Origin: Adineta vaga
Lineage: Eukaryota > Animalia > Rotifera
Direction: 5' to 3'
Assembly (NCBI GenBank): GCA_021613535.1
Contig: CP075492.1
Location: 310,001-374,000, forward strand
DNA: 64,000 nt
The notes under the pieces were generated by a model. That model did not search any database and was not told the origin of the DNA. It saw only the letters and a list, made by a program, of their open reading frames with translations. Shown here one piece after another: positions 1 through 21,398 of this stretch. The position numbers and the translations under genes were made by a program. The first letter of the stretch is position 1; each line of letters starts with the position of its first letter.

Positions 1-2608
1 AAATTCCATAGTTGACAAGTGTCTGGTAACTTATTGACGATTAGATTGACCAGTTTCGATGAACAAGTTTCACCTAGAATAGAAGTTTATTCCTATTGTT
101 TCTGATAAGTTTCGGATAAGTTTTACTAACCACCAGTAGTAACTGAGCGCAGATACTTCAAATTCTTGAAATCGCTCTGTGTACTCAGAAAAGTAAAGAA
201 ACTGTGAAGCAAACTTGGAACAGTCGTAATCGAAGTAATTTGTTTGTCTTGAATAATATTGAGCAGATAGTCAAACTGAAGAATTCCTCTGGGACGTAAC
301 ATAACTAACGCACCTCCACTAGTCAGAGCACCCATTATATCTTGCAAATGATCATCAAAAGAGCAGCGTGACATCTGAAGAATTCTATCGTCTCTATTTA
401 TAATGTTTGTGAAACTTAATGAGTCTATCATATGAGTAATATTTCGATGACGAATTTTGATCTACAAATAAGTAGAAAAATCGCTGTTAGACTTTTCCGA
501 TTACAATATATTGTTTCACAAACCGCTTTCGGTACTCCAGTTGAGCCACTTGTAAAAATGATGTAAGCAATATTTTTTGGTGTTACTACAATGTTTGACA
601 ATTGATCACAGCCAATATTATTTTGATTGTCATTATTAGTTAATATTAAATCAACATTCACTACGATTGTTTCATTATGTATCATAGTCTTTGTTAACCA
701 ATGAGCAATAACAAGATGACTTTGAGTCTGCTCGACAAGTGTATGCAGACGATATGAAGGGTCTCGAGGTGATAATGGACAATATACACCACCTACCATT
801 TCTATTGCCATTATACCAATTACCTAGAATGAACAACAATTTCTCCTAAATTCTAAGAGACACTCTTCTCATTCATCAACTTACCATTGATATACTTCTC
901 TCCACACATTGACAAATAATATCACCAACATTTACACGATATTCATTCAATAGAGTCAAAGACAATACTTGAACATAATATAACAGTTCACAATATGTCA
1001 ACGACTGTTCATCTAGTTCCACAGCTAACTTTTGTGAATAGATCATCGCTTTAGAAACAAACTCATGATGAATACATTGGACAGATGGAAATGATATTTG
1101 TGTATTATTCATTGATTGTACAAGTAATTGTTCAGTTGGTAGTGTTAATGATAATTCATACAGTGGTTTCTTCGATTGACTATCAATAATAGATGCACAT
1201 AGATCATACAACAGTGAATGAAATTGTTGTGAAATCTTATTCACAGTTTCCACGTGAAACAAATCCAATGATGCATCGATTGTACATGAAAGTTCATTAG
1301 GATCCAAAGTATGATGAAAAGTGAGAATAAAATCAAATTTACTCATCACTTCATCTTCACTAATCTCAATCGAATATGGTGCTAAAATAAGTTCACTATC
1401 ACCAAGATTTACTTTGTCTTGATCGTCATTTGTCATCGATGTTATAAACTGGAATGATGTATCAAGAAATGCAGGATTTGATAGATGAGGATGTTGTGCA
1501 AGAATACGTTGAAGTGGAAAATATGAATATTTCATAGTATTTGTCATCAAGACTCGCATTTGTTGAGTGAATTGATGAAACGAAGAATGAGGATCAAATT
1601 GACATCGAAGAGGAATAGCATTGACAAACATTCCAATTAGAGATCTAAATTCATCTCGATAACGTCCATCTGTATTCATTCCAATGCATAGATCTTGTTC
1701 TCCATTGGTTAATTTGAATAAGAAGATGAAATAAGTCATGAGTGACAAATAGTCAAGTGACATGTTATTTGTCGATGCATATGTAAGAAAGTATTGTGAA
1801 AGATCTTGTCCAAAATCAAACGAAATAGATGTTCCACGACCAGTTCGATGTTCATTTGCAAGACGATATCGATCATATGGTAATGAAAGAGATTGATCAA
1901 GTTTACAGTCATGGAGAGCATCAAGCCAAAACATTTCTGCACCAGTCATTGGCATTTGTTTTTCGATAGCAGCATCTATATAGAAGAACAAGTGACAAAT
2001 GAGAAAGAAAACGTGCGATGTTGAGGATGTATACTTACAATCAAGATAACGAAGGTTCGTTTCATCATTGTTGTCGTTAAGTAATTGACTTGTTGTATAT
2101 GCTTGATTAAGATCATGAAGAAATATATGCATTGATGGAAAATCAAATGCTGCATGATGAAAATTGAAGATGATTATATCTTTATGATGAAGTAGATGAT
2201 CGGAAGAGATGTGTTTGTAATAGACAAGATGACATCGAAAGACAAGACCTTGAGTAAGATTGAAGAGTTGAGGATTTCGTTTTTCTTCATGTATGATATT
2301 GTTGAGTTGTTGTTGTGTTTCATAAGTACTCTCAATAAATGTAAATAATGTCTTTTGATCTGTGGTAATGTCTATGATTCGTTGCATCAATATATTTTTA
2401 TCTTTGTCGAAAATGAATGCTGTATGAAGTGCAAGATGTTTGCTGATAGTGAGATCGAGTGCATGTTGAAGTTGTTTGACTGATATAGTATTGTTTGTAG
2501 AAAGGTGATAAACGAAAGGCATGTTATAGATTGCTACTTGTGGTTGATCAAGATCGAATCGCATCTGTTCACCGAGCCAAATGCGAGCTTGTGCATATGA
2601 TGCTGGTG
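1..2608 (-). CDS. NRPS module 3: C domain and N-terminal part of the A domain (truncated by the window edge)
   Basis: C domain with HHAAFDFPS. A domain with YIIFTSGSTGVPK, SFDDHLQD and SVTTGGE. The last exon (73-1) reads ETCSSKLVNLIVNKLPDTCQLWN. Confidence 0.88.
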
Positions 2609-5600
2609 CTATAGTTATCATAGCACATTTGTGTAAGAATAAAAACGCCAATGATGTAGAGGTGCTGAGGACGCACTCTCCCGAGTGATAGTTTCATGGG
2701 GTGTCTCTCTCTCTTTTACAAGTACGTTCAGTATTCATGCGAGTGGTAGCTAAGTACTCTCTTCAAAGATGAGCTATGGATAAAAAATAAAAATATATGA
2801 GTGGCCTAAATCACTCCACAGTTATATCAGAAGTGCCTGTAAAGTATTTTTAAATACTTGAAATATTTAATACGATTATCCTTTAGAACTCTAATTGAAG
2901 TACAGAGTGAATTCGACGTTAAGTAGCGATCCAGTAAGTTTCAGCTTTTATATAGAAAATACTTCACCATGTCTCTCTTTCGATATATATATTTACACTA
3001 ATCCCAAGGGGGAAAAAGCGGATTTAAATCAGTTAGAAATCAAATTTAAATCAAACAAATCACTTTAAATCAATTAAATCACCTTAAATCATTTGAATCA
3101 CTTTTAAATCAATTGAATCATTTAAATCACTTCTAAATCAATTAAATCATTTAAATCACTTCTAAATCATTTAAATCATTTAAATCACTTCTAAATCATT
3201 TAAATCATTACAAAAACTCTATGAAGTTATTACTGCAACTAATACAGTTAAAACATATCACACTTGTACACGTTACTGGATGCTCATGTGATATTGCGGA
3301 GCGAAAATAACTATTTCTTCGGTTTGATTTTATGACAAACATGTGCTTTCTATAGTCGTATAATATCTCGATACATAATTTCCTTTTGTCTGTCTACTTG
3401 AAATCTACTAAGACAGAACGCAAGAGAATTTTTTTTCGGTTCGTTGTTATCAGTAAGACGGAGAAATAAAGAGAAAATATTTTCTCTTCTTCTCGATTCG
3501 TTGTCGCATGTTCATTTTCATCTCATCGATATTCTAATTCAATACGTCTTCTATTCATTTGCATCCTATATACGAACTATTGTATTCTACGTACAAACAA
3601 TATTGTCTAAGAAAATAAGGAATTGAAGAAATAAATCATTTATAAGAATTCTTTTCATTTAGCAACGATTGATTAAGTTCGAAGATGATGAGTTCTATAA
3701 CGTCATACATTAATTTGTTGCGGTTCAACTATTAAACATTTTCAACTATTAAAATGATTATAATATAAGCAAATAAGTGATATATGGCAGTGATCATCTC
3801 AAAATATATTCCATGCGTTCCTGATCGATTCTTTTGTTATTTATTATATCTTCTTTGATGAATTCAAATTTCAGATGACTTTTCCTCTTCCAACTAATTC
3901 TCTTCTATTTTCTGGAGATTCATTCTACAGCATCGTTAAACAATTCTGTGGTGTTGAGGCGGTGGAATTACTTAAATTTCAGTTAATTGATACCTCAATG
4001 GATTTACTTGAAATCGATGATATCTTTTCCATTCTCTATTTCGAATCTGATCAAACTGATACGCTTAAACAAATATTAGGTTGTCCATGTAAAGATGAAT
4101 TTGGTAATTATTCATTCTTCGTTATGCCAGGAATTCGTTTGAAACTTAACAAATTTATTCATACACTTCGTTCTCTTCTACCAACTACTAATTCTGCATC
4201 GACTACCAAGTGCCTGACAATATCTTCTGATCTCATTCAACAATATCCGTTTCTGATTGATCTTATACATTGCCTCGAATCAAACTTATTCTCTAAATTT
4301 GTTTTGGACTTTGTTTCAAATATGACGTCGAATTTAACACGTTCAAAGAACTGCTTTCGTTATCAACAATCTGTGAAAGACTTTGCGACATGTCTTTACA
4401 TTCTGGGAGGAAGAACTGCATACGAGTTCATACGAATCAACATTCCAGGATCTATATCTAGTTTAACCAGCCTTCGAACAATCATTAGATCTTCAAAAAA
4501 TGAATATATTGAAGGTGAATTCTACTATGATCGTCTTAACTATTATATGGATTCGTTTAAATGCATATATGCATCCGTGGGAGAAGATTGTACTGGCGTA
4601 GTACAAAAAATACATTATGATGTTCATTCAAATTGCTTTACAGGATTCACGCTTCCACTTACAGATGGATTTCCTTCGACGCGATATTTCTCTACTGATA
4701 TATTAGCTGATCTTGAAATATGGTATAATCAGGTGGATAAAGCATCTCTTCTCAACGTATATGTCGTGCAACCGTTGTGTCCTACAACTCACACTTCACC
4801 CTCACCATTTATTCTATCAGCGTACGGTACAAACGGCAAGTATACCGCTCAAGACATTCTTAAAAGATGGTTCACCATATTTGATTCGTGTTTGAAGAGA
4901 AATATTAGGATACTCGCATTTTCAACGGATTGTGATCCTAGAAGCCTAAATGCGATGCGTAATGCAATGGGATTTTTTTCAAAATCAGTATTGCAATTAG
5001 AAGAACATCCACAGCATTTCGAAATTTCGTTTTTGAAGGTCAGTACACTATTAAAACGTTTAGGTTAAAAGCTATACGCTGGTTTTATTCGAAATATTTA
5101 GAAAAAAAATAATATCGTAATTATTTGAGTGGTAAAAAGATCTTAGACTTTTACAAACTTCGAACATTAATGAGACATTCTCGTGCAATAGAAAATACGT
5201 GAAGCTAACTGAATGGCCCTGATTTGATGGTTCCTTGTATTAGATAAGCTTAACTAAGTATAGCGATGAACTATTTTGTCAATCTGACGAAAAGCACCTC
5301 TATTTATATGCTAATTTTGTCTACTGATGAAAATCCTTCTACTTCGCAACAGCAGACACATGTGTTTGATCAAACATATACAGAATAGTCTGAAATATTA
5401 GAGGTGTTGAATGGTTAATAGCTTCTGCTAGTGGTGTTGTTTGAGTGAATAGCATCGTTTAAAAATGAAATGGGTATTTCATGACTGAATTTTGTTCCTA
5501 TCTCCCTGTTACGTATAAATAAAAATTTTTAAATTAAACTAATAAAAAACGAATCCAGTTTTCAATTCGACTTAAGAACACATGTTTTTATATTTTTATG

Positions 5601-7399
5601 AACTCTTTGATATTTTTTTCTAATATTTAGAATAGTTCATGGTTTTTTCTAAAACCACAACAACTTTTTGTCTGTTTTCAAGATGGTGTGCATATATGCA
5701 CCAAATTACGCAATCGTCTTTTGGATTCAGCAATTACACTACTGATAGGAGAAAAATATGCAAGTGTTGATTATCTTATGGAATTGATTAACAAATATTC
5801 AAAGCTCGATCATGCTCTAACAGTATCCGATGTCCTTCAAAACGATAAACAAAACTATTCATCTTGTGAAAAGATATCAAATGATGCTGTTCTTACTTCT
5901 CTTAAAAAAATTGCAAATTCTGAAGCATTACAAGCCTATCTACAAGTAATATTTCATCGATTTCTGTATTCATATAACTCACGAGAAACAATTTAATTCG
6001 ATTTAATCTTTGGTTCATTATAAAAAACAGTACTATGATGAAATCTTTTTTATAAGAATAGTCCTAAATTATCTTAAGGCTGCAGCTTTGATTCTGTCTC
6101 AAATTCTATGGAGTGCTTAAATATTTTTATTTAAATTTGATAGATTATTCGATTTGCTCGTTTGGCATTCGTCGAAAAACACACTTCTATTATTGATCGC
6201 TTATACTATTCGTGGACTGCTGTCTTTATAGTTCGTCTTTGGTCTTCATGGTTAGAAATTACAACTTATGCTGATCTAGAAGAGATAATGTCACATTTGT
6301 TACCATCCAATTCCATGGGATCTTTTTCTAAATCAAGCTTGTTCATAACCATGCCAGCTCTTTTTTCACTTGAACTAAATGTTCATAGCTTGACATACCT
6401 TGTAGTACTTGTATCAGAGCGAATGATAACTGAAGAAGCTCTAAATGTGTCGTTATATAATTCACAAATATGCGAGCAAACGTTCCGAGCGGCACGATCA
6501 ATGTCTGGTCCATTCTCATCTATTGTGAACTTTTCCGTTGATGAATTTCTTCAACGTGTCGAGAAACTAGCTGCTCTTCAAGCTATTAAATCTTCGTCTG
6601 ATTCTAATAATAACAACCTTATCTTTCCTAAACACCACAAACATTCACAACAAAAACATCAAGTACCTGTGATGAATATGACAACCGCGATCACAGAAAA
6701 ATTAATTCAAGTTACAGTTTTTAGTGCTTATCTTCAAGCTTGTCAAATTCTTTCAAGTTGCAACCTGTCGATCCTCAATCCTTATGATACAACTATATCT
6801 TTCGAAGAAGTGAATCATTTAGCATTTCAAAAGTTAACAAGATCACACTGTAAAACTTTTAGCCAGAAAGATTCTCAATTGAATAATAGCAAACAAGAAG
6901 ATGATGATGATTATGAAGAATATTTGAGCCAGAAACAGTCCAGTAGAAATAATAATTTTGATGACTACGATGAATCGATATCAAGTGATGAATCAAATAC
7001 TGATGTTCTTCCTAATGTTTCAAATTCAATATTTCGCGGAATGCGCATCTTTGACTCTATCAACAGCCATCAAAATGCATCGTTTTTTTCTGTTGAAGTA
7101 AATGGTCAGAAGAAATTCATGCATAAACAAGCTGCAAACTGGTATTTTTCCAAAAGAAAACCTACTTTATCTTCTGATCGATCAGTTAGAGTTCAAAAGA
7201 AGTGAATTATCTATTTCGTTTGTTTTCTACACATATACAATGTATGTGTATAATAAAAAAGAATGACCATTTCATTTTTCTCTTTCTCTAATTAACATAC
7301 TCAACTAACATGCAGTTCATCTTACGATAATAATACATATATCCTTAGCTAAAATGCTACTCAAAATAAAAAACATTTCATTCTAAATGTTTTCCTGAG

Positions 7400-7434
<35 letters not shown>

Positions 7435-10400
7435 CATGCATTAGATAAACTAAAATTTATGGCTTGTTTATCCTTCGATCCCTATGTTTTCGTATGTGCA
7501 GATTGATCGCTTATTTCGATAATTACTTGATAGACTAACTGGATAAAAATTAGCACGAACATTTATACGATACATGCATATTTCTAGGGAAATAGTAATC
7601 TTATGTCACCGTAAAGTCCTCATACGCTGCTCGATTTATATGAGTTTTAAACCACTTTAACTCATTTAAATCATTTAAATCATGTAAATCAAATAAATCA
7701 CCTTAACTCATTTAAATCAAGCAAATCATAAATCGCTTTTTCCCCCTCGACTAATCCCTTCGTTTTCTTTAACAAAGAAAGTAAATGAACTACATATACT
7801 ATAGGTAGAAGCAGAAGCAAATAAAATATATTCTCTATGAGAAACTAAAACGAACTAGATTTTGTCTTTCGAACACTCACAAATGAATCAAACAAGTGTC
7901 AACTATATATCTTTCATAGCTGCGATGGCTAAGTGCTTATGTTGTTTAAGATAAATTGAAACTATATTCTGTGCAAACGTCAGTGGCATCATTCATAGAA
8001 TAAATCTCAACAAATCAAGAACGAAATACTTCTCATAATTCTTACACTAGGGCATGGCCTACAATGTTAGTCACGATTTTAGAGAGGAGGAGTGCAAATA
8101 TCACTGTCTATAAAGAGAGAAAAGCTGTAGAGAGCAGTTTGATATGTAAATCATAACAATTATAGTTGTCATCTACACAAGACACGTCTATGAAAGATTA
8201 TTCGTAATATGGATCATCAACAACAATAAAATTTTAATCACAACAAGACAGAAACCTACCTTCACTTGTGATATTTGATTGTCGATCAAATATAACATCA
8301 TCGATTTCCTTAGCTTCCTTCGGCAATATAAGATCAAGTTTCGATACAGCTGTCCCACACATGTTCACTTCATCCACTATTCCATTCGATACAAACAATT
8401 GTTCAATACAATACGAAAATCGTTCACCTATATCTGTAACAGTTCCATCATCAAATAAATCATGAGAACATATAAAATACAATGATAATCTATTGTTTTG
8501 TAATGTTGGATTATAAACAAATGTTAACATGAAATCAAATTTAGCTATTTCATCTGATTGTTCTAATGATACTTCTTCTAATTTTGTATCATTCATCGAT
8601 AAGGAACTCTCACTTTCAGATAAAGTGATAAAATCGAACATTGTTTCCAAAAATGTAAGATTCGATTGGTTGGCATGAAAGTCATTAAGAATATGTTGAA
8701 GTGGATAATGAGAATGTTTAAGTATTGATAAACACATTTCTCTTACAGAATGAACAACTTCATCAAATGACCAATCTCCATTGAGTTGAATACGATATGG
8801 TAATGTTGCTACAAACATTCCTATCATATTATACAATTCAGATCGATATCGATTGGCATTTATACTACCAACACATAAATCAGTTTGATTGTGAGATAAT
8901 TTAAATAGAAATACATAAAATATCGATAGTCCAAGTTGAAAAATGTAAGATGATGTGATGATGCATAGTTTAGAAATGATGTACATGTAACATCATTTAG
9001 TATTATTTGAGTTGTAGCACCTAAGCCAGATCGATGATGAATTGATGAACGAGATCGATCATATGGTAATGATAATGAATGTTGAAGATCACATCCTTGA
9101 AGTTGAGAATACCAAAACTCACGAGATAAGGTCATATCCATGACATGTTCATGAACAGAATAATCAACATATTGAAATGAATTGTCATCTAGAGATAGCG
9201 AACTATGATCTTGATAAGCAAGAGAAAGATCACGAATAAAGATTGATGTTGATGCACCATCAAAGAAAGCATGATGAACAGTAAATAATATTAAATCATC
9301 TCTATTCAACATATCATCTTCTTCATTTGAACTGTGTGTGTGAGAACGAAGAATATGACAATTAATGACATGTCCTTTTGATAAATCAAATAAATCACAT
9401 TTATTCAAGATTCTCTTCACAATTTCATTCATATCGCCATCTTCTCTGGAAACATTCACTATTGAAAAACCAAATGTTTCACTATTATTGCTTAAAGTAT
9501 TCATATCTCGACAATCTTGTACAATAATACCATTTTGATCAAGATAAAGTGCTGTTCTCAGAATCTGATGTTTTCTAATGATACATTGATATGCATGATA
9601 TAATCGTGAAATTGATATATGATGGTCATTTATCGATGATAGACGATATATTAATGGAATAACATACATATTTGTATTGTTATCTGTCGAAGAAGAAGAA
9701 GAAGAAGAAGAAGAAAATCGAATATTTTCATCTAAGAAAATGCGTTCTTGAGCAAAGGATGCTTTCGCTAAAGTGAGAAATAGAATGTGGTTATTAGAGT
9801 ATTTTTGAGATTATATTTGTTACCTGTAAGGATATTTAATGAATGCCAAGAATGATCATCTTTACTCAATTCGGTATTGAGAATCTGATGAATAAGTTTT
9901 GCATGATCAATGATAGTTGGATGTTGAAATAGATCAGTAATAGCAATGGAATTTATTTCTAATCGAAATTCTACTTTATAGTGATGTAGAAGTTGCATAA
10001 TAATTAATGAATGGCCACCAATAGAGAATATGTTTGTATTAGTAGAGATTTGTTTTTGTTTCAATAGATCACACCATATATGATGAATAATAGATTCAAT
10101 TTTATTTGTTGGTTCTACTAAATCGTTAGTATTGTTGAGTTTAGTTGAAGAGAGAACAAGGGAATCAGGTGAGGGCAATCGTTTTCGATCAATTTTTCCA
10201 TTTGGATTGAGAGGTAATTTATCAAGAATAATGAAACGAGATGGAATCATATGCGGTGGAAGATGTGATTGACAATATTCATGTAATTCGTTTTCGCTGA
10301 TGACTGAACTTTGAACATAAGCAACTAAATGATCTTCACCCCATTTCACCACAACACAAGTAGATATCGATGTAATACTAAGTAGGCATCGTTCAATTTC

Positions 10401-13400
10401 ACCAAGTTCAATCCTTTGTCCATGTAGTTTGATTTGAAAATCTTTTCTTCCCTCATAATAGACAAGACCATTACGATCTAATTTGACAACATCGCCAGTT
10501 TGATAAAACTTTTGTTCATCGATTTCAAGAATAACTTTTGTGGTCAGATCGTTACGATAAAGATAGCCAGCGAATACACCGCCACCACCAATAAATAGCT
10601 CACCTTGTTGGCCAACGGGCACGTGTTGAAAATACATATCCAATACTTTATAATGTTCATTAGGTAGTAATCTTCCAAGAGCGATAATTGATTCACTGGA
10701 TCTGGAACTTATACGATGATAGAAGGAAACAACTGTGGTCTCAGCTGGCGCGTATATATTGTACAGAGTACAGTTGTTGTCAATGTGGCTTTGTAAGCGA
10801 TGAACAAGTCGTTTCGATATAGGTTCTCCTAGAAAGCTTAGATGTGTTTTCAACATACTTTTCATAGTTAACTTACCTCCAAAGCACAGTGATCGTAGCG
10901 TTGACAAAGAATCGCAGTGTAGACGTTCAATAGCATCACATAAATAATCTAAGAAGGTTGGAACTGGTGCAATACATGTAATTTTTTTAGTTTCGCATAT
11001 GTTCATAAAATACAAAAAGTCCATGTTTCCATATGGATGTAAAAGCACAAGAGATGAAGACAAAAATAAACTACCAATGATCTCCATGGTATGCACATCA
11101 TATGTAGGAGCACATATTTGCGCCATAACATCATTTTTCAACAGTATTCCACTGTGTTGTAAACTTCGTATAAAATTTGAGAAATTCCGGTGCCTAGTTT
11201 GAATCTGGAAAAAAGCAACAAACTGAGGGTGACTCAATACAAAGTGTTAACAACATACTGCTTTTGGTACACCTGTCGAACCACTTGTGAAAATGATGTA
11301 AGCTATATTATCAGATGATACCGTTATCTTTGAAAGTTTCTGTGACTCGATATCGCCACTGAAATCTGTATCAGTCAGCAATATATCAATATCCAATAAA
11401 TTCTGAAGGTCAGAGATCTTTGCTACAGTTGGCTGATGAACAATAACAACGTGAGACATCGTTTGTTGTACAAGAGCATGTAACCGATCTTCTGGATCTC
11501 GAGGAGATAACGGACAATATACACCACCTGCCATTAGAATTCCCATTATGCCAATTACCTAAAACACGAGAAACTTCCTGATTATAAACATCAAAAAATT
11601 ATCCAACGCAACCTACCATTGATATACTTCTCTCCACACATTGACAAATAATATCACCAACATTTACACGATATTCATTCAATAGAGTCAAAGACAATAC
11701 TTGAACATAATATAACAGTTCACAATATGTCAACGACTGTTCATCTAATTCTACAGCTAACTTTTGTGAATAGATCATCGCTTTAGAAACAAACTCATGA
11801 TGAATGCATTTGACAGATGGATATGATATTTGTGTATTATTCATTGATTGTACAAGTAATTGTTCAGTTGGTAGTGTTAATGATAATTCATACAGTGGTT
11901 TCTTCGATTGACTATCAATAATAGATGCACATAGATCATACAACAGTGAATGAAATTGTTGTGAAATCTTATTCACAGTTTCCACGTGAAACAAATCCAA
12001 TGATGCATCGATTGTACATGAAAGTTCATTAGGATCCAAAGTATGATGAAAAGTGAGAATAAAATCAAATTTACTCATCACTTCATCTTCACTAATCTCA
12101 ATCGAATATGGTGCTAAAATAAGTTCATTATCACCAAGATTTACTTTGTCTTGATCGTCATTTGTCATCGATGTTATAAACTGGAATGATGTATCAAGAA
12201 ATGCAGGATTTGATAGATGAGGATGTTGTGCAAGAATACGTTGAAGTGGAAAATATGAATATTTCATACTATTTGTCATCAAGACTCGCATTTGTTGAGT
12301 GAATTGATGAAACGAAGAATGAGGATCAAGTTGACATCGAAGAGGAATAGCATTGACAAACATTCCAATTAGAGATCTAAATTCATCTCGATAACGTCCA
12401 TCTGTATTCATTCCAATGCATAGATCTTGTTCTCCATTGGTTAATTTGAATAAGAAGATGAAATAAGTCATGAGTGACAAATATTCAAGTGATATGTTAT
12501 TTGTGGATGCATAAGTGAGAAAGTAATGTGAAAGATCTTGTCCCAAATCAAAAGAAATAGATGTTCCACGGCCAGTTCGATGTTCATTTGCAAGACGATA
12601 TCGATCATATGGTAATGAAAGAGATTGATCAAGTTTACTATTATGTAGAGCATCAAGCCAAAACATTTCTGCACCAGTCATTGGCATTTGTTGTTCGATA
12701 GCAGCATCTATACAGAAGAACAAGTGACAAATGAGAAAGAAAACGTGCGATGTTGAGGATGTATACTTACAATCAAGATAACGAAGGTTCGTTTCATCAT
12801 TGTTGTCGTTAAGTAATTGACTTGTTGTATATGCTTGATTAAGATCATGAAGAAATATATCCGTTGATGGAAAATCAAATGCTGCATGATGAAAATTGAA
12901 GATGATTATATCTTTATGATGAAGTAGATGATCGGAAGAGATGTGTTTGTAATAAACAAGATGACATCGAAAGACAAGACCTTGATTAAGACTAAAGAGT
13001 CGAGGATTTCGTTTTTCTTCATGTATGATATTGTTGAGTTGTTCTTGTGTTTCATAAGTACTCTCAATAAAGGTAAATAATGTCTTTTGATCTGTGGTGA
13101 CGTCTATGATTCGTTGCATCAATATATTTTTATTTGTGTCGAAAATGAATGCTGTATGAAGTGCAAAATGTTTGTCGATAGTGAGATAGAGTGCATGTTG
13201 AAGTTGTTTAACTGATATGGTATTGTTTGTAGAAAGATGATAAATGAAAGGCATGTTATAGATTGCTACTTGTGGTTGATCAAGATCGAATCGCATCTGT
13301 TCACCGAGCCAAATGCGAGCTTGTGCATATGATGCTGGTGCTATAGTTATCATAGCACATTTGTATAAGAATAAAAACGCCAATGATGTAGAGGTGCTGA

Positions 13401-16400
13401 GGACGCACTCTCCCGAGTGATAGTTTCATGGGGTGTCTCTCTCTCTTTTACAAGTACGTTCAGTATTCATGCGAGTGGTAGCTAAGTACTCTCTTCAAAG
13501 ATGAGCTATGGATAAAAAATAAAAATATATGAGTGGCCTAAATCACTCCACAGTTATATCAGAAGTGCCTGTAAAGTATTTTTGAATACTTGAAATATTT
13601 AATACGATTATCCTTTAGAACTCTAATTGAAGTACAGAGTGAATTCGACGTTAAGTAGCGATCCAGTAAGTTTCAGCTTTTATATAGGAAATACTTCACC
13701 ATGTCTCTCTTTTGATATATATATATATATATTCACACTAATCCCTTCGTTTTCTTTAACAAAGAAAGTAAATGAACTACATATACTATAGGTAAAAGCA
13801 GAAGCAAACAAAATATATTCTCTATCAGAAACTAAAACGAACTAAATTTTGTCTTTCGAACACTCACAAATGAATCAAACAAATGTCAACTATGTATCTT
13901 TCATAGCTGCGATGGCTAAGTGCTTATGTTGTTTAAGATAAATTGAAACTATATTCTGTGCAAACATCAGTGGCATCATTCATAGAATAAATCTCAACAA
14001 ATCAAGAACGAAATACTTCTCATAATTCTTACACTAGGGCATGGGCTACAATGTTAGTCACGATTTTAGAGAGGAGGAGTGCAAATATCACTGTCTATAA
14101 AGAGAGAAAAGCTGTAGAGAGCAGTTTGATATGTAAATCATAACAATTATAGTTGTCATCTACACAAGACACGTCTGTGAAAGATTATTCGTCATATGCA
14201 CCTTCAACAACAAGATATTTTTAGTTCGAACAGAAACCTACCTTCACTTGTGATATTTGATTGTCGATCAAATATAACATCATCGATTTCCTTAGCTTCC
14301 TTCGGCAATATAAGATCAAGTTTCGATACAGCTGTCCCACACATGTTCACTTCATCCACTATTCCATTCGATACAAACAATTGTTCAATACAATACGAAA
14401 ATCGTTCACCTATATCTGTAACAGTTCCATCATCAAATAAATCATGAGAACATATAAAATACAATGATAATCTATTGTTTTGTAATGTTGGATTATAAAC
14501 AAATGTTAACATGAAATCAAATTTAGCTATTTCATCTGATTGTTCTAATGATACTTCTTCTAATTTTGTATCATTCATCGATAAGGAACTCTCACTTTCA
14601 GATAAAGTGATAAAATCGAACATTGTTTCCAAAAATGTAAGATTCGATTGGTTGGCATGAAAGTCATTAAGAATATGTTGAAGTGGATAATGAGAATGTT
14701 TAAGTATTGATAAACACATTTCTCTTACAGAATGAAAAACTTCATCAAATGACCAATCTCCATTGAGTTGAATACGATATGGTAATGTTGCTACAAACAT
14801 TCCTATCATATTATACAATTCAGATCGATATCGATTGGCATTTATACTACCAACACATAAATCAGTTTGATTGTGAGATAATTTAAATAGAAATACATAA
14901 AATATCGATAGTCCAAGTTGAAAAAATGTAAGATGATGTGATGATGCATAGTTTAGAAATGATGTACATGTAACATCATTTAGTATTATTTGAGTTGTAG
15001 CACCTAAGCCAGATCGATGATGAATTGATGAACGAGATCGATCATATGGTAATGATAATGAATGTTGAAGATCACATCCTTGAAGTTGAGAATACCAAAA
15101 CTCACGAGATAAGGTCATATCCATGACATGTTCATGAACAGAATAATCAACATATTGAAATGAATTGTCATCTAGAGATAGCGAACTATGATCTTGATAA
15201 GCAAGAGAAAGATCACGAATAAAGATTGATGTTGATGCACCATCAAAGAAAGCATGATGAACAGTAAATAATATTAAATCATCTCTATTCAACATATCAT
15301 CTTCTTCATTTGAACTGTGTGTGTGAGAACGAAGAATATGACAATTAATGACATGTCCTTTTGATAAATCAAATAAATCACATTTATTCAAGATTCTCTT
15401 CACAATTTCATTCATATCGCCATCTTCTCTGGAAACATTCACTATTGAAAACCAAATGTTTCACTATTATTGCTTAAAGTATTCATATCTCGACAATCTT
15501 GTACAATAATACCATTTTGATCAAGATAAAGTGCTGTTCTCAGAATCTGATGTTTTCTAATGATACATTGATATGCATGATATAATCGTGAAATTGATAT
15601 ATGATGGTCATTTATCGATGATAGACGATATATTAATGGAATAACATACATATTTGTATTGTTATCTGTCGAAGAAGAAGAAGAAGAAGAAGAAGAAAAT
15701 CGAATATTTTCATCTAAGAAAATGCGTTCTTGAGCAAAGGATGCTTTCGCTAAAGTGAGAAATAGAATGTGGTTATTAGAGTATTTTTGAGATTATATTT
15801 GTTACCTGTAAGGATATTTAATGAATGCCAAGAATGATCATCTTTACTCAATTCGGTATTGAGAATCTGATGAATAAGTTTTGCATGATCAATGATAGTT
15901 GGATGTTGAAATAGATCAGTAATAGCAATGGAATTTATTTCTAATCGAAATTCTACTTTATAGTGATGTAGAAGTTGCATAATAATTAATGAATGGCCAC
16001 CAATAGAGAATATGTTTGTATTAGTAGAGATTTGTTTTTGTTTCAATAGATCACACCATATATGATGAATAATAGATTCAATTTTATTTGTTGGTTCTAC
16101 TAAATCGTTAGTATTGTTGAGTTTAGTTGAAGAGAGAACAAGGGAATCAGGTGAGGGCAATCGTTTTCGATCAATTTTTCCATTTGGATTGAGAGGTAAT
16201 TTATCAAGAATAATGAAATAAGATGGAATCATATGCGGTGGAAGATGTGATTGACAATATTCATGTAATTCTTTTTCACTAACGACTGAACTTTGAACAT
16301 AAGCAACTAAATGATCTTCACCCCATTTCACCACAACACAAGTAGATATCGATGTAATACTAAGTAGGCATCGTTCAATTTCACCAAGTTCAATCCTTTG

Positions 16401-19400
16401 TCCATGTAGTTTGATTTGAAAATCTTTTCTTCCTTGATAATAGATACGACCATTATGGTCTATTTTGGCAAGATCACCAGTTCGATAAAATAACATATCA
16501 TCGATATAAATTACTGCTTTCGATGTTAAATCATCGCGTTCAAGATAGCCAGCAAAGACGCCTACTCCACCGATAAATAGCTCTCCTTCTTCGTTGAGCA
16601 TCACACTCTGGAAGTGCTCATTCAAAATTGTTAGACGATAATTCAGCAGCGGCCGACCTATTGGAACACCTTCACTTTCGATAGTGCAATGCAAAAGATA
16701 ACTAGTACAAGCAATAGTAGATTCTGCTGGGCCATATAGATTCCAGATGTTACAGCTTACTATGCTGATGCTGGAAATTAAGTTTAATAAACTTGAATTA
16801 AATGCATCTCCTGTTAAAGCAGAAAACTAGCCCGATGATATAGCAATAAACATATAGTCCGCAACTCACCGATGCTACAGACTGACCGAAGATGTTTAGC
16901 AACATGACCAAGCCTGTAATCCCATATGTACTTGAAAAAACTGACAAGTAAACTAGGAACAGTGTGTATGTATGTAGTTTGTTTGTCGTGTAACACCCTC
17001 GATAGATAATCAAAGTCAATAGTTCCTCTCGGATGAAGCATAATTAATGTAGCACCTTTCGAGAGAATACCAAGTATCTCTTGAACATGAATATCGAAGG
17101 AACATCGTGCCATTTGTACTGCAGTATCTTCTTTATTAAACGAGCCTATGAAGGTCAAAGAATGCATACATTCATTGAAACTGCCATGTCGAACTTGAGC
17201 CTAAAAAGACAAAGAGAAAGAGAAATTCAACAAAAAGAAACAATGAACGCGCACCGCTTTCGGTACCCCAGTTGAGCCACTTGTGAATATGACGTATGCA
17301 ATGTTTTCTGGTATCACTACAATGTTTGACAACTGTTCAAAGTGTATATCATTTTGTGTGTTATTATTAGTCAATATCAAATCAACATTGACTAAGATAT
17401 TTTCATCATATTGCTTATTCCTTGTTAACCAATGCACAAGGACAAGACGACTATGAGTCTGTTCTACAAGCGTATGTAAACGATGTGGTGGATCTCGCGG
17501 TGATAATGGACAATATACACCACCTGCCATTTCAATTGCCATTATACCGATGACCTAGAGTGAAGAACAATCTTTCACTGATAATAACAGATACTTTTCT
17601 GATTCATCTACTTACCATTGATATACTTCTCTCCACACACTGACAAACAATATCACCAACTTTTACATCATATTGGTTCAGTAAAGTCAAAGACAATACC
17701 TGAACATAATACAACAGTTCACAATATGTCAACGATTGTTCATCTAATTCTACAGCTAACTTTTGTGAATATATCATTGCTTTGGAAACAAATTCATGAT
17801 GAATACAGTTGACAGATGCAAATGATATTTGTGTATTATTCATTGATTGTACAAGTAATTGTTCATATGGCAATGTTAATGAGAATTCATACAGTGGTTT
17901 CTTCGCTTGACTATGAATAGATGTTGACAACTGACACAACATTAAATGAAATTGCTGTGAAATCTTATTCACAGTTTCCACGTGAAACAAATCCAATGAT
18001 GCATCGATTGTACATGAAAGTTCATTAGGATCCAAAGTATGATGAAAAGTGAGAATAAAATCAAATTTACTCATCACTTCATCTTCACTAATCTCAATCG
18101 AATATGGTGCTAAAATAAGTTCATTATCACCAAGATTTACTTTGTCTTGATCGTCATTTGTCATCGATGTTATAAACTGGAATGATGTATCAAGAAATGC
18201 AGGATTTGATAGATGAGGATGTTGTGCAAGAATACGTTGAAGTGGAAAATATGAATATTTCATACTATTTGTCATCAAGACTCGCATTTGTTGAGTGAAT
18301 TGATGAAACGAAGAATGAGGATCAAATTGACATCGAAGAGGAATAGCATTGACAAACATTCCAATTAGAGATCTAAATTCATCTCGATAACGTCCATCTG
18401 TATTCATTCCAATGCATAGATCTTGTTCTCCATTGGTTAATTTGAATAAGAAGATGAAATAAGTCATGAGTGACAAATATTCAAGTGACATGTTATTTGT
18501 CGATGCATATGTGAGAAAGTATTGTGAAAGATCTTGTCCAAAGTCAAACGAAATAGATGTTCCACGACCAGTTCGATGTTCACTTGCAAGACGATATCGA
18601 TCATAGGGTAATGATAGAGATTGATCGAGTTTACTATTATGTAGAGCATCAAGCCAAAACATTTCTGCACCAGTCATTGGCATTTGTTGTTCGATAGCAG
18701 CATCTATATAGAAGAACAAGTGACAAATGAGAAAGAAAACGTGCGATGTTGAGGATGTATACTTACAATCAAGATAACGAAGGTTCGTTTCATCATTGTT
18801 GTCGTTAAGTAATTGACTTGTTGTATATGCTTGATTAAGATCATGAAGAAATATATGCATTGATGGAAAATCAAATGCTGCATGATGAAAATTGAAGATG
18901 ATTATATCTTTATGATGAAGTAGATGATCGGAAGAGATGTGTTTGTAATAGACAAGATGACATCGAAAGACAAGACCTTGAGTAAGATTGAAGAGTTGAG
19001 GATTTCGTTTTTCTTCATGTATGATATTGTTGAGTTGTTGTTGTGTTTCATAAGTACTCTCAATAAATGTAAATAATGTCTTTTGATCTGTGGTAATGTC
19101 TATGATTCGTTGCATCAATATATTTTTATTTGTGTCGAAAATGAATGCTGTATGAAGTGCAAGATGTTTGTCGATAGTGAGATAGAGTGCATGTTGAAGT
19201 TGTTTCACTGATATAGTATTGTTTGTAGAAAGGTGATAAACGAAAGGCATGTTATAGATTGCTACTTGTGGTTGATCAAGATCGAATCGCATCTGTTCAC
19301 CGAGCCAAATGCGAGCTTGTGCATATGATGCTGGTGCTATAGTTTAGAAGAATTATTTTAGTTTTTATTTGTGTCATGTCGATGAGAGTACGAAGGGTGT

Positions 19401-21398
19401 GATTTTTTTTAGCCAACATTCTGTTTCTCGCTGAAAGGTTTAGAAACAAGTATAAAATCTCAGATTCAAGGGAAGAGAAAATTGGGTGATGATGGAAATG
19501 GATGGGTGACAACAGGCACAGCTTGGTACAATATTTCATCTGAAGCTTCATTCATGTAGTTTCCAAAGAACTTTAACTCAACTGAAATCAGAAATCGCTC
19601 TTATCCTCTATTTTCACTGTTCAAATGTTTATGAATCACAATGTGGATCAGACTCGATTGTATGACCATTTTTATTAGGTTTGTCCGTTTGCTTAGTTTG
19701 TAGCGAATTATATCCTCTAAGATATTATCGACAAAGATTTTAATGAAAGATTGGTATTATATGTCTATATTAGTCCGTCACCGTGAGTATCAACATTATC
19801 TAATCGAAATAAAAGAATATACCTTCATTTTCAATAGTTTGTAATCTAAAAAAGACAGCTCTTTTTATTTCGTCTATATCTTCTGGTAAGACGAGTGATA
19901 GTTGGTAAATAGGCATGTCAGAGTGTCTAGTAATTGAGTTATCGAGTGCTTGAGAACCGAAAAGTTGCGTCAGTATGTGTTTAAAACGCTTTGCAAGTAG
20001 ATCAACATCAGTTTGATTTTGATATATATCAGCCGAACAATCAAAAAAACATTCGATACTCTTTGCATGATGATCATGTGATATTGTAAGAAAGGTATCA
20101 AATGCCACTACTCCATTTCCATGGAGTCGATCTCGATCAAAATACATACCGAGATCAATATCACCATCTATAGTGAATTCTTTATTATTTTTTGCTGTTA
20201 ATGATGACACTAATGATTCATATTGAAATAATATTGATGGTAATGCTTGTTGGTCTCGTTGTTCATATGAATTAATAATATGCTGATAAGGTAAATAAGC
20301 ATGTTCTAGAATATTGTTACTTAATTCTTGTACTTTTCGTGTAAGATAACTAAATGAACCTTCTGGTTCCATTTTCATTCGATATGGCACAACGTTAACA
20401 AACATTCCGATCATATTTTCCATTCCTTGAGATCGATTTGCCATAACACTTGCTATACATAAATCATTTTTATCATCATCATTGACTAATTTCATTAATA
20501 ATATATAATAGCAAGCAAGACATAATGAAAACATAGTAATATTATTTTCTGTAGCATATAGTGCCATTCCGTCAACAAGCTGTTGATCTAAAGTAAATGC
20601 AACTGAGTAGCTACGACCAAATGATTTTTTATTTGTTTTATTTTTATTAGATATAAAATCTTGTGTTTTAGTCCAATCGTATCCATTCATAAGATTGGAC
20701 CAAAATCGACGTGCTTTATTCATTTTAGAATCTGTACTTGTATCAGCTAACATTGCCTGTTCATATAATGCAACGTCGATATATTGTGGAATCAACAATG
20801 TTGGTTGCTGATGACGATTAATCCAACAAGCTTGTTTAAATGCTTGAATAAATGGTTTAGCTGAATTAGCATCCAATGCGATATGGTGAAAACTAATAAC
20901 AATTAGATCATTTTCATGTAATGATACGTCATGATAATCGTCAGTTCGTTCTATTATGTGACATCGTAAAACTTTTCCTTTTTCCATATCGAAATGTTTT
21001 CGAACAGACTCATTTGTAAGAAGACGATCGAGTTCTTCTAATGTTGCAACATTTCTTGAATGTTCAAATGAATAAATAGCATCAACAAGAGGAAGAATGT
21101 ATTGTTTGATTTGATTAGTTTCCGGATCAAAACGAACAGCAGTACGAAAAACCATGTATTGTTCAATTAATATAAGTAAAATCGAATGGATACGTTCGAT
21201 TAGTAATGAACCTCTTTTGATTATGAATGGTACTATAAGATTATAGACCGATAAATCAGAAGATTCAAAATTAATCTTTTCATGAAGCCATATTCGTTGT
21301 TGAGCCAATGAAGCAATAGTTTCTGTTCGACCTGAAATTGTGAGTTTTGGTTGTTTACGTACTTTTGTTTCGTTTATGACATATTGACGTGAAAACAT
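1..21398 (-). CDS. Multi-exon, multimodular nonribosomal peptide synthetase (C-C-A-T-C-C-A-T-C-C-A...), continuing past the left window edge
   Basis: The ORF fragments join in frame across GT-AG introns at 19822-19337, 18766-18704, 17615-17555, 17254-17201, 16869-16811, 15805-15750, 14241-13341, 12770-12708, 11616-11559, 11258-11205, 10876-10829, 9823-9768, 8259-2609, 2038-1976, 884-824, 523-462 and 130-74. C motifs: ASxAQxRIW/F and HHxxxD. A motifs: YIIFTSGSTGVPK, NLYGPAE, YRTGD, GRKDFQIKLHGQRIELGEIE and NPNGKIDRK. T motif: IFSIGGHSL. There are two 1-nt homopolymer deletions, at ~15449 and ~8941. Confidence 0.9.
3005..7749 (+). mobile_element. P-superfamily DNA transposon (4745 bp) inserted in an NRPS intron
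   Basis: TIRs CAAGGGGGAAAAAGCG (3005-3020) and CGCTTTTTCCCCCTCG (7734-7749). 8-bp TSD ACTAATCC at 2997-3004 and 7750-7757. The empty site with a single ACTAATCC is visible in the paralogous intron at ~13737. Subterminal TTAAATCA arrays at both ends. Confidence 0.93.
3875..7205 (+). CDS. P-element/THAP9-type transposase, 3 exons (3875-5038, 5631-5945, 6144-7205), ~846 aa
   Basis: Phase-0 GT-AG introns join the three ORFs with no stops. P-transposase-like motifs: AYEFIR..IPGS.SSL.SLR, FSTDCD, QDGVHICTKLRNRLL, DKQNY and SQICEQTFRAARS. Confidence 0.82.
8260..9767 (-). CDS. NRPS extra condensation domain exon (copy b; 1-nt deletion near 8941)
   Basis: Near-identical to 14242-15749, including a (GAA)9 poly-Ser tract. 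Contains HHAFFDGAS. Confidence 0.85.
9824..13340 (-). CDS. NRPS module 2: C-A-T (5 exons)
   Basis: C domain with HHAAFDFPS. A domain with TYDVHTME, SLCFGGE and YNIYAPAETTVV. The T domain (GGHSL) has the same protein sequence as in module 1. Confidence 0.88.
14242..15749 (-). CDS. NRPS extra condensation domain encoded by one phase 1-1 exon (copy a; 1-nt deletion near 15449)
   Basis: ASFAQERIFL...HHAFFDGAS...MIGMFVATLPYR. The exon is 1508 nt, or 1509 (3n) after restoring the A that is present in copy b. Confidence 0.85.
15806..19336 (-). CDS. NRPS module 1: C-A-T (5 exons)
   Basis: C domain with HHAAFDFPS. A domain with SFDIHVQE, SVCSIGDA and WNLYGPAESTIA. T domain with GGHSL. Confidence 0.88.
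19823..21398 (-). CDS. NRPS first exon: N-terminal (putative starter) condensation domain
   Basis: Motifs ASLAQQRIWL, HHIALDANS, QYIDVA and MIGMFVNVVPYR. It ends at GAAG|GTATATT, a phase-1 donor at the same position as in the later C exons. It is not similar at DNA level to the repeated C exons. Confidence 0.85.

What the first reader, a model, noticed from the sequence alone, without database searches (positions are those of the whole stretch)
2608..19823. All internal C-domain boundaries are phase-1 introns, so the NRPS could be reprogrammed by splicing
Donors after 19823, 15806, 14242, 9824 and 8260 each leave one G. Acceptors at 19336, 15749, 13340, 9767 and 2608 each resume at the same A(P/K)AS(Y/F)AQ motif. 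Any donor can therefore join any downstream acceptor in frame. Skipping the extra C exon gives a canonical T-C-A junction (ILT|APASYAQ), and skipping a full unit deletes one amino-acid module. Both frameshifts seen in the NRPS fall inside the skippable C exons. The same geometry would favour exon shuffling of modules. The short 56-bp upstream intron argues for default inclusion, so skipping remains a hypothesis.
Basis: partly seen in the sequence, partly recalled or inferred. Interest (0 to 1): 0.82.

Follow-up and report, generated by a model that had tools for sequence, protein, structure and literature searches.

The report
Same-phase introns in rotifer NRPS
In a giant peptide-synthetase gene of the rotifer Adineta vaga, every condensation-domain start follows an intron in the same reading phase, but this comes from one old intron copied along with the modules, and nothing yet shows the animal uses it to rewire the enzyme by alternative splicing.

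Summary
All five donors and five acceptors are at the stated bases, have GT/AG, are phase 1, and resume one codon before the C1 motif.

The pattern is not local. The window holds the first 3 of 11 modules of the catalogued A. vaga Av20 cluster region3.1. All 21 such boundaries in that gene share the geometry. So do 15 of 16 related exons sampled elsewhere in the genome and relatives from other bdelloids. One ancient T-C linker intron, copied with the modules, explains the matching phase.

Phase 1 is not specific to domain boundaries. Two introns inside domains are also phase 1.

The "extra" C exon (C') is an old paralogue with an intact HHxxxDG motif, under purifying selection (dN/dS 0.20-0.54). 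A paralogous cluster lacks C' and has plain T|C-A modules, which supports evolutionary cassette gain or loss.

Both frameshifts are 1-nt deletions in T runs, in copies that otherwise differ by one substitution. They are probably assembly errors.

The sequence favours constitutive inclusion: a strong acceptor lies 56 nt downstream, against a weak one more than 2.4 kb away.

The geometry is real but ordinary in origin. Reprogramming by splicing remains speculation.

The parts
22497..31259 (-). Upstream highly reducing PKS (KS-AT-DH-ER-KR-ACP). Its reading frame ends at TAA 22499-22497.
   Evidence: Pfam hits; stop codon read; listed as PKS_KS to PKS_KR CDS of region3.1.
19823..21398 (-). NRPS exon 1: ATG at 21398 and an N-terminal condensation domain (Cs, motif HHIALDA). 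It ends with one G before GT (phase 1).
19337..19822 (-). 486-nt phase-1 intron between Cs and the C of module 1.
   Evidence: GT at 19822-19821 and AG at 19338-19337. It is unrelated to the C'|C introns except for its last 8 nt.
15806..19336 (-). Module 1, C-A-T, in five exons: 19336-18767, 18703-17616, 17554-17255, 17200-16870 and 16810-15806. The internal introns are phase 1, 0, 0 and 1.
   Evidence: all exons are open in the predicted phases.
15750..15805 (-). 56-nt phase-1 intron between T and C', with a pyrimidine-rich acceptor. It is identical to 9768-9823.
14242..15749 (-). C' exon copy 1, 1508 nt. It holds a condensation domain with HHAFFDG plus an A-leader stub. The frame is broken by a T4 run at 15451-15448, where six other copies have T5.
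13341..14241 (-). 901-nt phase-1 intron between C' and C, with a purine-rich acceptor.
9824..13340 (-). Module 2, C-A-T. It has the same exon plan as module 1. Its A core (11461-10606) is unrelated at the DNA level to that of module 1 (17457-16588).
9768..9823 (-). 56-nt phase-1 intron between T and C'.
8260..9767 (-). C' exon copy 2, 1508 nt. The frame is broken by a T5 run at 8943-8939, where the other copies have T6. Apart from the two indels it differs from copy 1 by one substitution.
2609..8259 (-). 5651-nt phase-1 intron between C' and C. It carries a 4.8-kb mobile-element-like insert at about 2993-7749.
   Evidence: Flanks match the 901-nt intron. The insert recurs elsewhere in the genome at 100% and 73-77% identity. 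It has subterminal 9-10-nt repeat arrays and a weak P-element HTH hit.
1..2608 (-). Start of module 3 (C and the N-terminal part of A). The gene continues about 75 kb to the left of the window, with 8 more modules.

Best explanation
The window holds the 5' part of one very large, intron-bearing NRPS gene of Adineta vaga. It lies in cluster region3.1 of assembly Av20, next to a PKS gene. The NRPS layout is Cs, then 11 C-A-T modules, with an additional condensation-domain exon (C') between each T and the next C.

Every C-type domain starts two bases after a phase-1 intron in the T-C linker, one codon before the C1 motif. This is one ancient intron position. It was inherited by all C lineages of the bdelloid family and multiplied by tandem module duplication and concerted evolution, so identical phase at all boundaries is automatic. 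C' is an old, selectively maintained symmetric 1-1 cassette (1503 or 1509 nt when intact).

The most likely mode of expression is constitutive splicing of adjacent exons, giving a T-C'-C-A-T assembly line. The two frameshifts are most likely homopolymer errors of the assembly in its most repetitive stretch (about 70%).

Shown: splice-site positions and phases, open exons, repeat structure, family-wide conservation, purifying selection on C', and the identity of the locus.
Inferred: actual splice-site use, constitutive inclusion, and the artefactual nature of the frameshifts.
For: - Exact GT/AG sites and phases. All other checked exons (module 1 and the first three of module 2) are open in the predicted phases.
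- Modules 1-3 are 94-97% identical tandem copies. There are 11 C acceptors, 10 T donors and 10 C' donors of the same form over about 96 kb.
- The same acceptor position and phase occur in a metagenome relative and in A. steineri. They also occur in 15 of 16 paralogous exons from other clusters of this genome at 36-79% identity. Seven C'-type exons end with the same GAAG|GT donor.
- In a tree of N-lobes, the C, C'-alpha, C'-beta and single-C lineages are separate, well-supported clades that all carry the intron.
- C' has HHAFFDG in all alpha copies. Its nearest solved structures are true C domains. dN/dS between clusters is 0.20-0.54.
- The C' acceptor is pyrimidine-rich and 56 nt from its donor. 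The C acceptors are purine-rich and at least 2.4 kb further.
- Both frameshifts are 1-nt deletions in T runs. The two copies otherwise differ by 1 substitution in 1.5 kb.
- Nowell et al. 2024 list this locus as 'intact', 20,965 aa, and ascribe frameshifts in expressed clusters to assembly challenges.
Against: - No transcript evidence was obtained, so neither constitutive splicing nor the absence of skipping is shown.
- The C'|C introns (0.9-5.7 kb) are far longer than the other introns of the gene (48-63 nt). Splicing across them could be inefficient or regulated.
- Two of two frameshifts fall in C' exons, which make up about 22% of the coding bases in the window. That is P about 0.05 if they were placed at random. 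The assembly-error reading explains this only through the extreme similarity of these exons, and I could not check reads.
- Single-base deletions in T runs are also the commonest natural indels.
Confidence: 0.72

Rival explanations
1. One reading: regulated alternative splicing skips C' exons or whole C-A-T|C' units. One gene would then encode several assembly lines, and skipping would rescue the two frameshifted C' exons.
For: - All boundary introns are phase 1, so every such join is in frame.
- The T|C-A architecture that skipping would produce exists natively in a paralogous cluster.
- Both frameshifts lie in C' exons.
- The long C'|C introns could allow competition between acceptors.
Against: - Phase identity is explained by descent.
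- The strong proximal acceptor 56 nt away favours inclusion.
- C' is conserved and under purifying selection with an intact catalytic motif.
- The frameshifts look like homopolymer errors.
- Neither the paper nor its supplements mention isoforms.
- No RNA evidence exists either way.
Confidence: 0.07
2. The frameshifts are real and nothing rescues them. On this haplotype the NRPS is a recently inactivated gene in a TE-rich subtelomere, and the splice geometry is only a relic.
For: - Two frame-breaking deletions.
- Mobile-element insert in an intron. Several other multi-kb interruptions lie in modules to the left.
- The location is subtelomeric, 0.23-0.34 Mb from the end of a 20.35-Mb chromosome.
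Against: - All other exons checked are open, and five other C' copies are intact.
- An indel-to-substitution ratio of 2:1 between the two copies is unlike natural decay.
- The published catalogue calls the locus intact.
Confidence: 0.15
3. The long 'introns' after C' are intergenic. Each C-A-T-C' unit would be a separate gene whose C' acts as a terminal or docking condensation-like domain.
For: - A stop codon follows each C' donor within about 10 codons if the donor is read through.
- The C'|C gaps are unusually long.
- In two copies an in-frame ATG lies 4 codons upstream of the acceptor.
Against: - That ATG is absent in the other nine copies, which have stops there.
- GAAG|GT donors and AG acceptors are conserved across paralogues whose flanking intron sequence has diverged.
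- The split codon always reconstitutes Ala or Gly.
- The first downstream ATG in the C exon is not conserved.
Confidence: 0.04

Closest known systems
A. vaga Av20 biosynthetic cluster region3.1 (Nowell et al. 2024, Nat Commun, PMC11258130, Supplementary Data 9)
   Same: It is the same locus: Chrom_3 225210..345004, minus strand. Its CDS coordinates equal my ORFs (for example PKS_KS 340468-341259 = window 30468-31259). Both C and C' are labelled Condensation_LCL. The locus is called intact, with 20,965 aa estimated.
   Different: The paper lists domains only. It says nothing on intron phases, the C' cassette, the two frameshifts in the window, or isoforms. Its length estimate assumes the PKS and NRPS are co-translated, whereas the PKS frame ends in a stop 1.1 kb before the NRPS ATG.
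Class 1-1 symmetric domain exons and exon shuffling in metazoan proteins (Patthy; discussed in PMC6335736)
   Same: A whole domain is encoded by an exon flanked by phase-1 introns, so it can be inserted, duplicated or removed without breaking the frame. The cassette is present in some family members and absent in others.
   Different: Here the domain is a catalytic domain of a horizontally acquired cytosolic megasynthase, not an extracellular module. The matching phase traces to one intron position copied by tandem duplication, not to many independent shuffling events.
Recombination and concerted evolution among NRPS modules with preserved A-domain cores (bacterial NRPS literature, from my own knowledge; also scan notes s1-482554 and s1-482646)
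   Same: The module scaffolds are near identical, while an ~870-nt A core is anciently divergent.
   Different: The breakpoints (17457 and 16588) lie inside exons 4 and 6. This diversification therefore does not use the phase-1 introns.
Protein-level module skipping in NRPS (for example the bacillomycin D example in review PMC11546977)
   Same: The outcome would be the same as the proposed one: a shorter peptide from the same gene.
   Different: That process occurs on the assembled enzyme, not by RNA splicing. I found no documented case of splicing-based NRPS reprogramming, though the search was limited.
Engineered NRPS fusion points: the XU site at the WNATE motif of the C-A linker and the XUC site between the two C subdomains (review PMC11546977)
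   Same: The C' exon ends within a residue or two of the WNATE-equivalent (S-N-I-T-S-E). The internal C intron lies near the N-lobe/C-lobe junction (after R-Y-L-D). The T|C intron lies in the T-C linker.
   Different: This correspondence rests on motif reading only and was not tested structurally. The natural sites are intron positions, not proven recombination points.

Membership tests
NRPS condensation domain (Pfam PF00668) | Significant match to the Condensation profile | tested here: met
   Cs, C and C' all score above the gathering cut-off, with E-values from 1e-18 to 1e-44.
NRPS condensation domain (Pfam PF00668) | Catalytic HHxxxDG motif | tested here: met
   C' has HHAFFDG (complete). 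C has HHAAFDF and Cs has HHIALDA, so the His-His-x3-Asp is kept and the Gly is replaced.
Epimerization domain (considered for the 'extra' C) | E-type motifs and closest similarity to E domains | tested here: not met
   C' starts with a C1-type S-x-A-Q-x-R motif and has a C5-type I-G-M-F-V motif. All solved-structure hits are condensation domains such as Txo2, AB3403, TycC and LgrA; none is an E domain.
Symmetric class 1-1 exon-shuffling cassette | Domain exon flanked by introns of the same phase, with length divisible by 3 | tested here: met
   Phase 1 on both sides. Five intact copies are 1503 or 1509 nt. The two in-window copies are 1508 nt because of single-base deletions.
Symmetric class 1-1 exon-shuffling cassette | Cassette present or absent among related genes | tested here: met
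   Many clusters carry C' exons. Cluster C6:1.012-1.032 Mb has single-C modules every 3.3 kb.
Alternatively spliced cassette exon | Transcripts both with and without the exon | not testable with these tools
No same-species protein or contig evidence is on record.
Alternatively spliced cassette exon | Weak or competing splice sites around the exon | tested here: inconclusive
   By eye, the C' acceptor tract is about 15/18 pyrimidines and lies 56 nt from its donor. The C acceptor is about 9/18 and lies at least 2.4 kb away. This argues for inclusion, but no quantitative splice-site model for this species was available.
A. vaga Av20 cluster region3.1 | Coordinates, strand and domain order match the published table | tested here: met
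   The window is C3:310001-374000. The published CDS at 332496-334112, 340468-341259 and 235645-238476 equal my ORFs.

The most novel reading that the evidence does not exclude
The rotifer uses regulated skipping of the symmetric C' exons, or of whole C-A-T|C' units, to make several different peptide assembly lines from one ~96-kb gene. In particular, it would bypass the two frame-broken C' exons. That would be RNA-level reprogramming of an NRPS.
Probability: 0.06. Interest if true: 0.88.

Novelty: new member of a known kind. Interest (0 to 1): 0.35.

Why it matters
If splicing really rewired an NRPS, it would be a new way of generating natural-product diversity, and an animal invention built on bacterial machinery.

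What the evidence supports is more modest but still useful. After horizontal transfer, the bdelloid NRPS family acquired an intron exactly in the T-C linker. Around it, a whole extra condensation domain behaves as a frame-neutral cassette, present in some clusters and absent in others. The natural intron positions also lie at or near the sites that engineers use as NRPS fusion points: the T-C linker, the WNATE-like C-A leader and the junction between the C lobes. This suggests they mark structurally tolerant seams.

The work also flags two probable assembly errors in a locus published as intact.

Tried and rejected
2. Independent records of the frameshifted (412 aa) and intact (478 aa) C' ORFs. 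Nothing is on record.
3. Word-based protein search with the A-T exon. It found only relatives at 69% identity or less (Adineta steineri, Rotaria, metagenomes) and no same-species transcript-derived proteins.
4. Bacterial relatives of C', to ask whether a T-C-C-A layout is ancestral. The search for related loci on genome contigs confirmed none.
5. The idea that C' is an epimerization domain. Rejected.
6. The idea that C' is a recent copy of the neighbouring C. Rejected: they share 34% identity and fall in separate old clades.
7. The idea that each unit is a separate gene. Judged unlikely (see rival explanations).
8. Literature search for NRPS alternative splicing or intron phase. Nothing relevant was found.
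9. All searches used single exons by reference, and the tree used only the single-exon N-lobe.
Full report
**Observation.** The NRPS lies on the minus strand. I read the five donors and five acceptors directly and located them by pattern.
- The exons end with a G at 19823, 15806, 14242, 9824 and 8260, each followed by GT.
- The next exons begin at 19336, 15749, 13340, 9767 and 2608, each after AG.
- The split codon plus the following codons read A-P-A-S-Y-A-Q or A-K-A-S-F-A-Q, which is the start of the condensation C1 motif.
- The introns measure 486, 56, 901, 56 and 5651 nt.

With these phases, exon 1, all five exons of module 1 and the first three of module 2 are free of stops. Only the two C' exons are broken. 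The coordinates, phases and motif in the finding are therefore correct.

**What the locus is.**
- The window is G000:C3:310001-374000 of a 100.8-Mb, six-contig genome.
- The best protein relatives are from the bdelloid rotifers Adineta steineri and Rotaria, at 60-69% identity.
- The coordinates of Supplementary Data 9 of Nowell et al. 2024 (PMC11258130) match my ORFs base for base. Their PKS_KS CDS at 340468-341259 is window 30468-31259, and their PKS_KR at 332496-334112 is window 22496-24112.
- The genome is therefore A. vaga Av20. The locus is their region3.1 (Chrom_3 225210..345004, minus strand, 'intact', estimated 20,965 aa).
- A KS-AT-DH-ER-KR-ACP PKS occupies 31259-22497 and ends in a stop codon.
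- The NRPS frame opens with an ATG at 21398.
- By fetching 80 kb to the left of the window, I found that the NRPS continues to about window -74,760.
- Its layout is an N-terminal condensation domain (Cs), then 11 C-A-T modules with 10 extra condensation exons (C') between them, then a terminal exon with hexapeptide-repeat hits.

**Why all the boundaries share a phase.**
- Modules 1-3 are tandem copies, 94-97% identical over most of their length. The C' exons of the array are 98-100% identical. The five boundaries are therefore copies of three positions: Cs|C, T|C' and C'|C.
- Over the whole gene I counted 11 C acceptors, 10 T donors and 10 C' donors of the same form.
- The same acceptor, two bases before the codon that precedes A-S-x-A-Q, occurs in a metagenome relative (L015) and in A. 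steineri (L014), which are about 62% identical to this gene in the A-T exon.
- It also occurs in 15 of 16 C-type exons that I cut from other clusters of this genome, at 36-79% identity. The exception (L027) has T and C fused in one frame.
- Seven C'-type paralogues end with the same GAAG|GT donor.
- In a maximum-likelihood tree of the single-exon N-lobes, four lineages are separate, well-supported clades: the C fused to A, C'-alpha, C'-beta and the single-C type. The first three all carry this intron, and so do the single-C exons read at base level (L026, L031).
- The simplest reading is one ancient intron in the T-C linker that every lineage inherited.
- C and C' are paralogues (34% identity, E 2e-71). 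C' is not a recent copy of its neighbour.

**Phase 1 is not special to domain boundaries.** Each module has four more introns: one between the two lobes of C (phase 1), two in the N-terminal half of A (phase 0), and one further into A (phase 1). In-frame joins are therefore also possible at sites that would cut domains in half.

**What C' is.**
- It is a genuine condensation-type domain. It has a Pfam Condensation hit, C1- and C5-type motifs, and a complete HHAFFDG in every alpha copy.
- All its solved-structure relatives are C domains, and none is an epimerization domain. The published table also labels both C and C' as LCL.
- Its last ~25 residues resemble the leader of an A domain, up to a WNATE-like S-N-I-T-S-E. 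This is my reading, and is an inference.
- Between paralogous clusters its dN/dS is 0.20-0.54. It is therefore translated and maintained, not a decaying appendage.
- The cluster at C6:1.012-1.032 Mb has plain C-A-T modules every 3.3 kb, with only a ~56-nt gap between T and C. Both architectures thus exist in one genome. C' behaves as a frame-neutral cassette (1503 or 1509 nt) that has been gained or lost during evolution.
- The diversification seen inside this array does not use the introns. The block that differs between modules 1 and 2 runs from 17457 to 16588, with both ends inside exons.

**The frameshifts.**
- Aligning seven alpha-type C' exons shows that copy 1 lacks one T of a T5 run (15451-15448) and copy 2 lacks one T of a T6 run (8943-8939).
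- Apart from these two indels, the copies differ by a single substitution in 1.5 kb. A 2:1 ratio of indels to substitutions, both in homopolymers and in the most repetitive part of the locus, is what consensus errors look like. Natural decay does not usually look like this.
- The Supplementary Information of Nowell et al. says that about 10 of 40 clusters show apparent frameshifts, that several of these are highly expressed, and that this may reflect assembly challenges.
- I put about 70% on artefact. I could not check reads.

**Alternative splicing.**
I followed its instruction to move on and did not use read laying.
- No same-species transcript-derived protein turned up.
- From sequence alone, default inclusion is favoured. 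After the T donor, a pyrimidine-rich acceptor lies 56 nt away. That length is typical of this gene's introns (48-63 nt). The next C acceptor is purine-rich and at least 2.4 kb further on.
- The paper and its supplements contain no mention of isoforms or alternative splicing.
Between modules 1 and 2, the 413 nt before the T donor, the intron and the first 298 nt of C' are identical. Short reads therefore cannot tell 15806>15749 from 15806>9767.
- Template switching between such repeats would also fake skipping.

**Comparison with what is known.**
- The locus is already catalogued.
- The exon geometry is a clean example of the classical symmetric 1-1 domain cassette, here in a horizontally acquired megasynthase. 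I did not find this described.
- Splicing-based NRPS reprogramming would be new, but it has no support yet.

**Limits.**
- The exon model rests on sequence, frame and conservation only.
- The tree uses about 175 residues and a midpoint root.

Noticed in passing
window 21398 leftwards to about -74,760 (G000:C3:235,241-331,398; loci L006-L013): The NRPS has 11 modules plus 10 C' exons spread over about 96 kb. Several introns are swollen to 4-7 kb by insertions, for example inside the A domains of modules 4 and 7. The published estimate is 20,965 aa, which would make it one of the largest proteins known if it is a single product.
   Followed up: partly
window 15749-14242 and 9767-8260; all modules of the gene: Every module has a double condensation layout, T-C'-C-A. 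Both domains keep HHxxxD (C' has HHAFFDG, C has HHAAFDF). Which domain makes the peptide bond, and what the other does, is unknown. I found no bacterial relative with this layout.
   Followed up: partly
window 14242/8260 (C' donor), 18767 (intron inside C), 15806/9824 (T donor): The natural intron positions sit at or near engineered NRPS fusion points: the WNATE-like C-A leader (XU), the junction of the C lobes (XUC) and the T-C linker (review PMC11546977). This rests on motif reading only.
   Followed up: no
window 2993-7749: A 4.8-kb mobile-element-like insert lies in the C'|C intron. It has arrays of 9-10-nt TAAATCA-type repeats near both ends and ORFs of 397 and 347 aa on the plus strand. 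There is a weak, sub-threshold hit to the P-element transposase HTH domain. A 100% identical copy lies at C3:18.62 Mb, and 73-77% copies lie elsewhere.
   Followed up: partly
window 17457-16588 versus 11461-10606: The A-domain cores of modules 1 and 2 are unrelated at the DNA level, although the flanks are 94-97% identical. Both breakpoints lie inside exons. This agrees with the scan's notes on A-core swapping.
   Followed up: partly
window about 15700-15670 and 9718-9688: A (TCT)n poly-serine tract near the start of the C' exons varies by 6 nt between copies, giving the 1503-nt and 1509-nt forms.
   Followed up: no
window 18766-18704, 12770-12708, 10876-10829: In these copies the intron inside C (63 nt) and the module-2 intron further into A (48 nt) are multiples of 3 and free of stops. 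Retaining them would insert 16-21 residues rather than truncate the protein.
   Followed up: no
window 22499-21398: The PKS frame ends in TAA at 22499-22497, and the NRPS frame opens with an ATG at 21398, 1.1 kb downstream. The published length estimate assumes co-translation. Whether the two are joined by splicing was not determined.
   Followed up: no
L008:5241-8587 (window -74,759 to -71,413): After A-T, the terminal exons carry bacterial hexapeptide-repeat (Hexapep) hits instead of a TE or R domain. Another note of this scan calls this end Pls-like.
   Followed up: no
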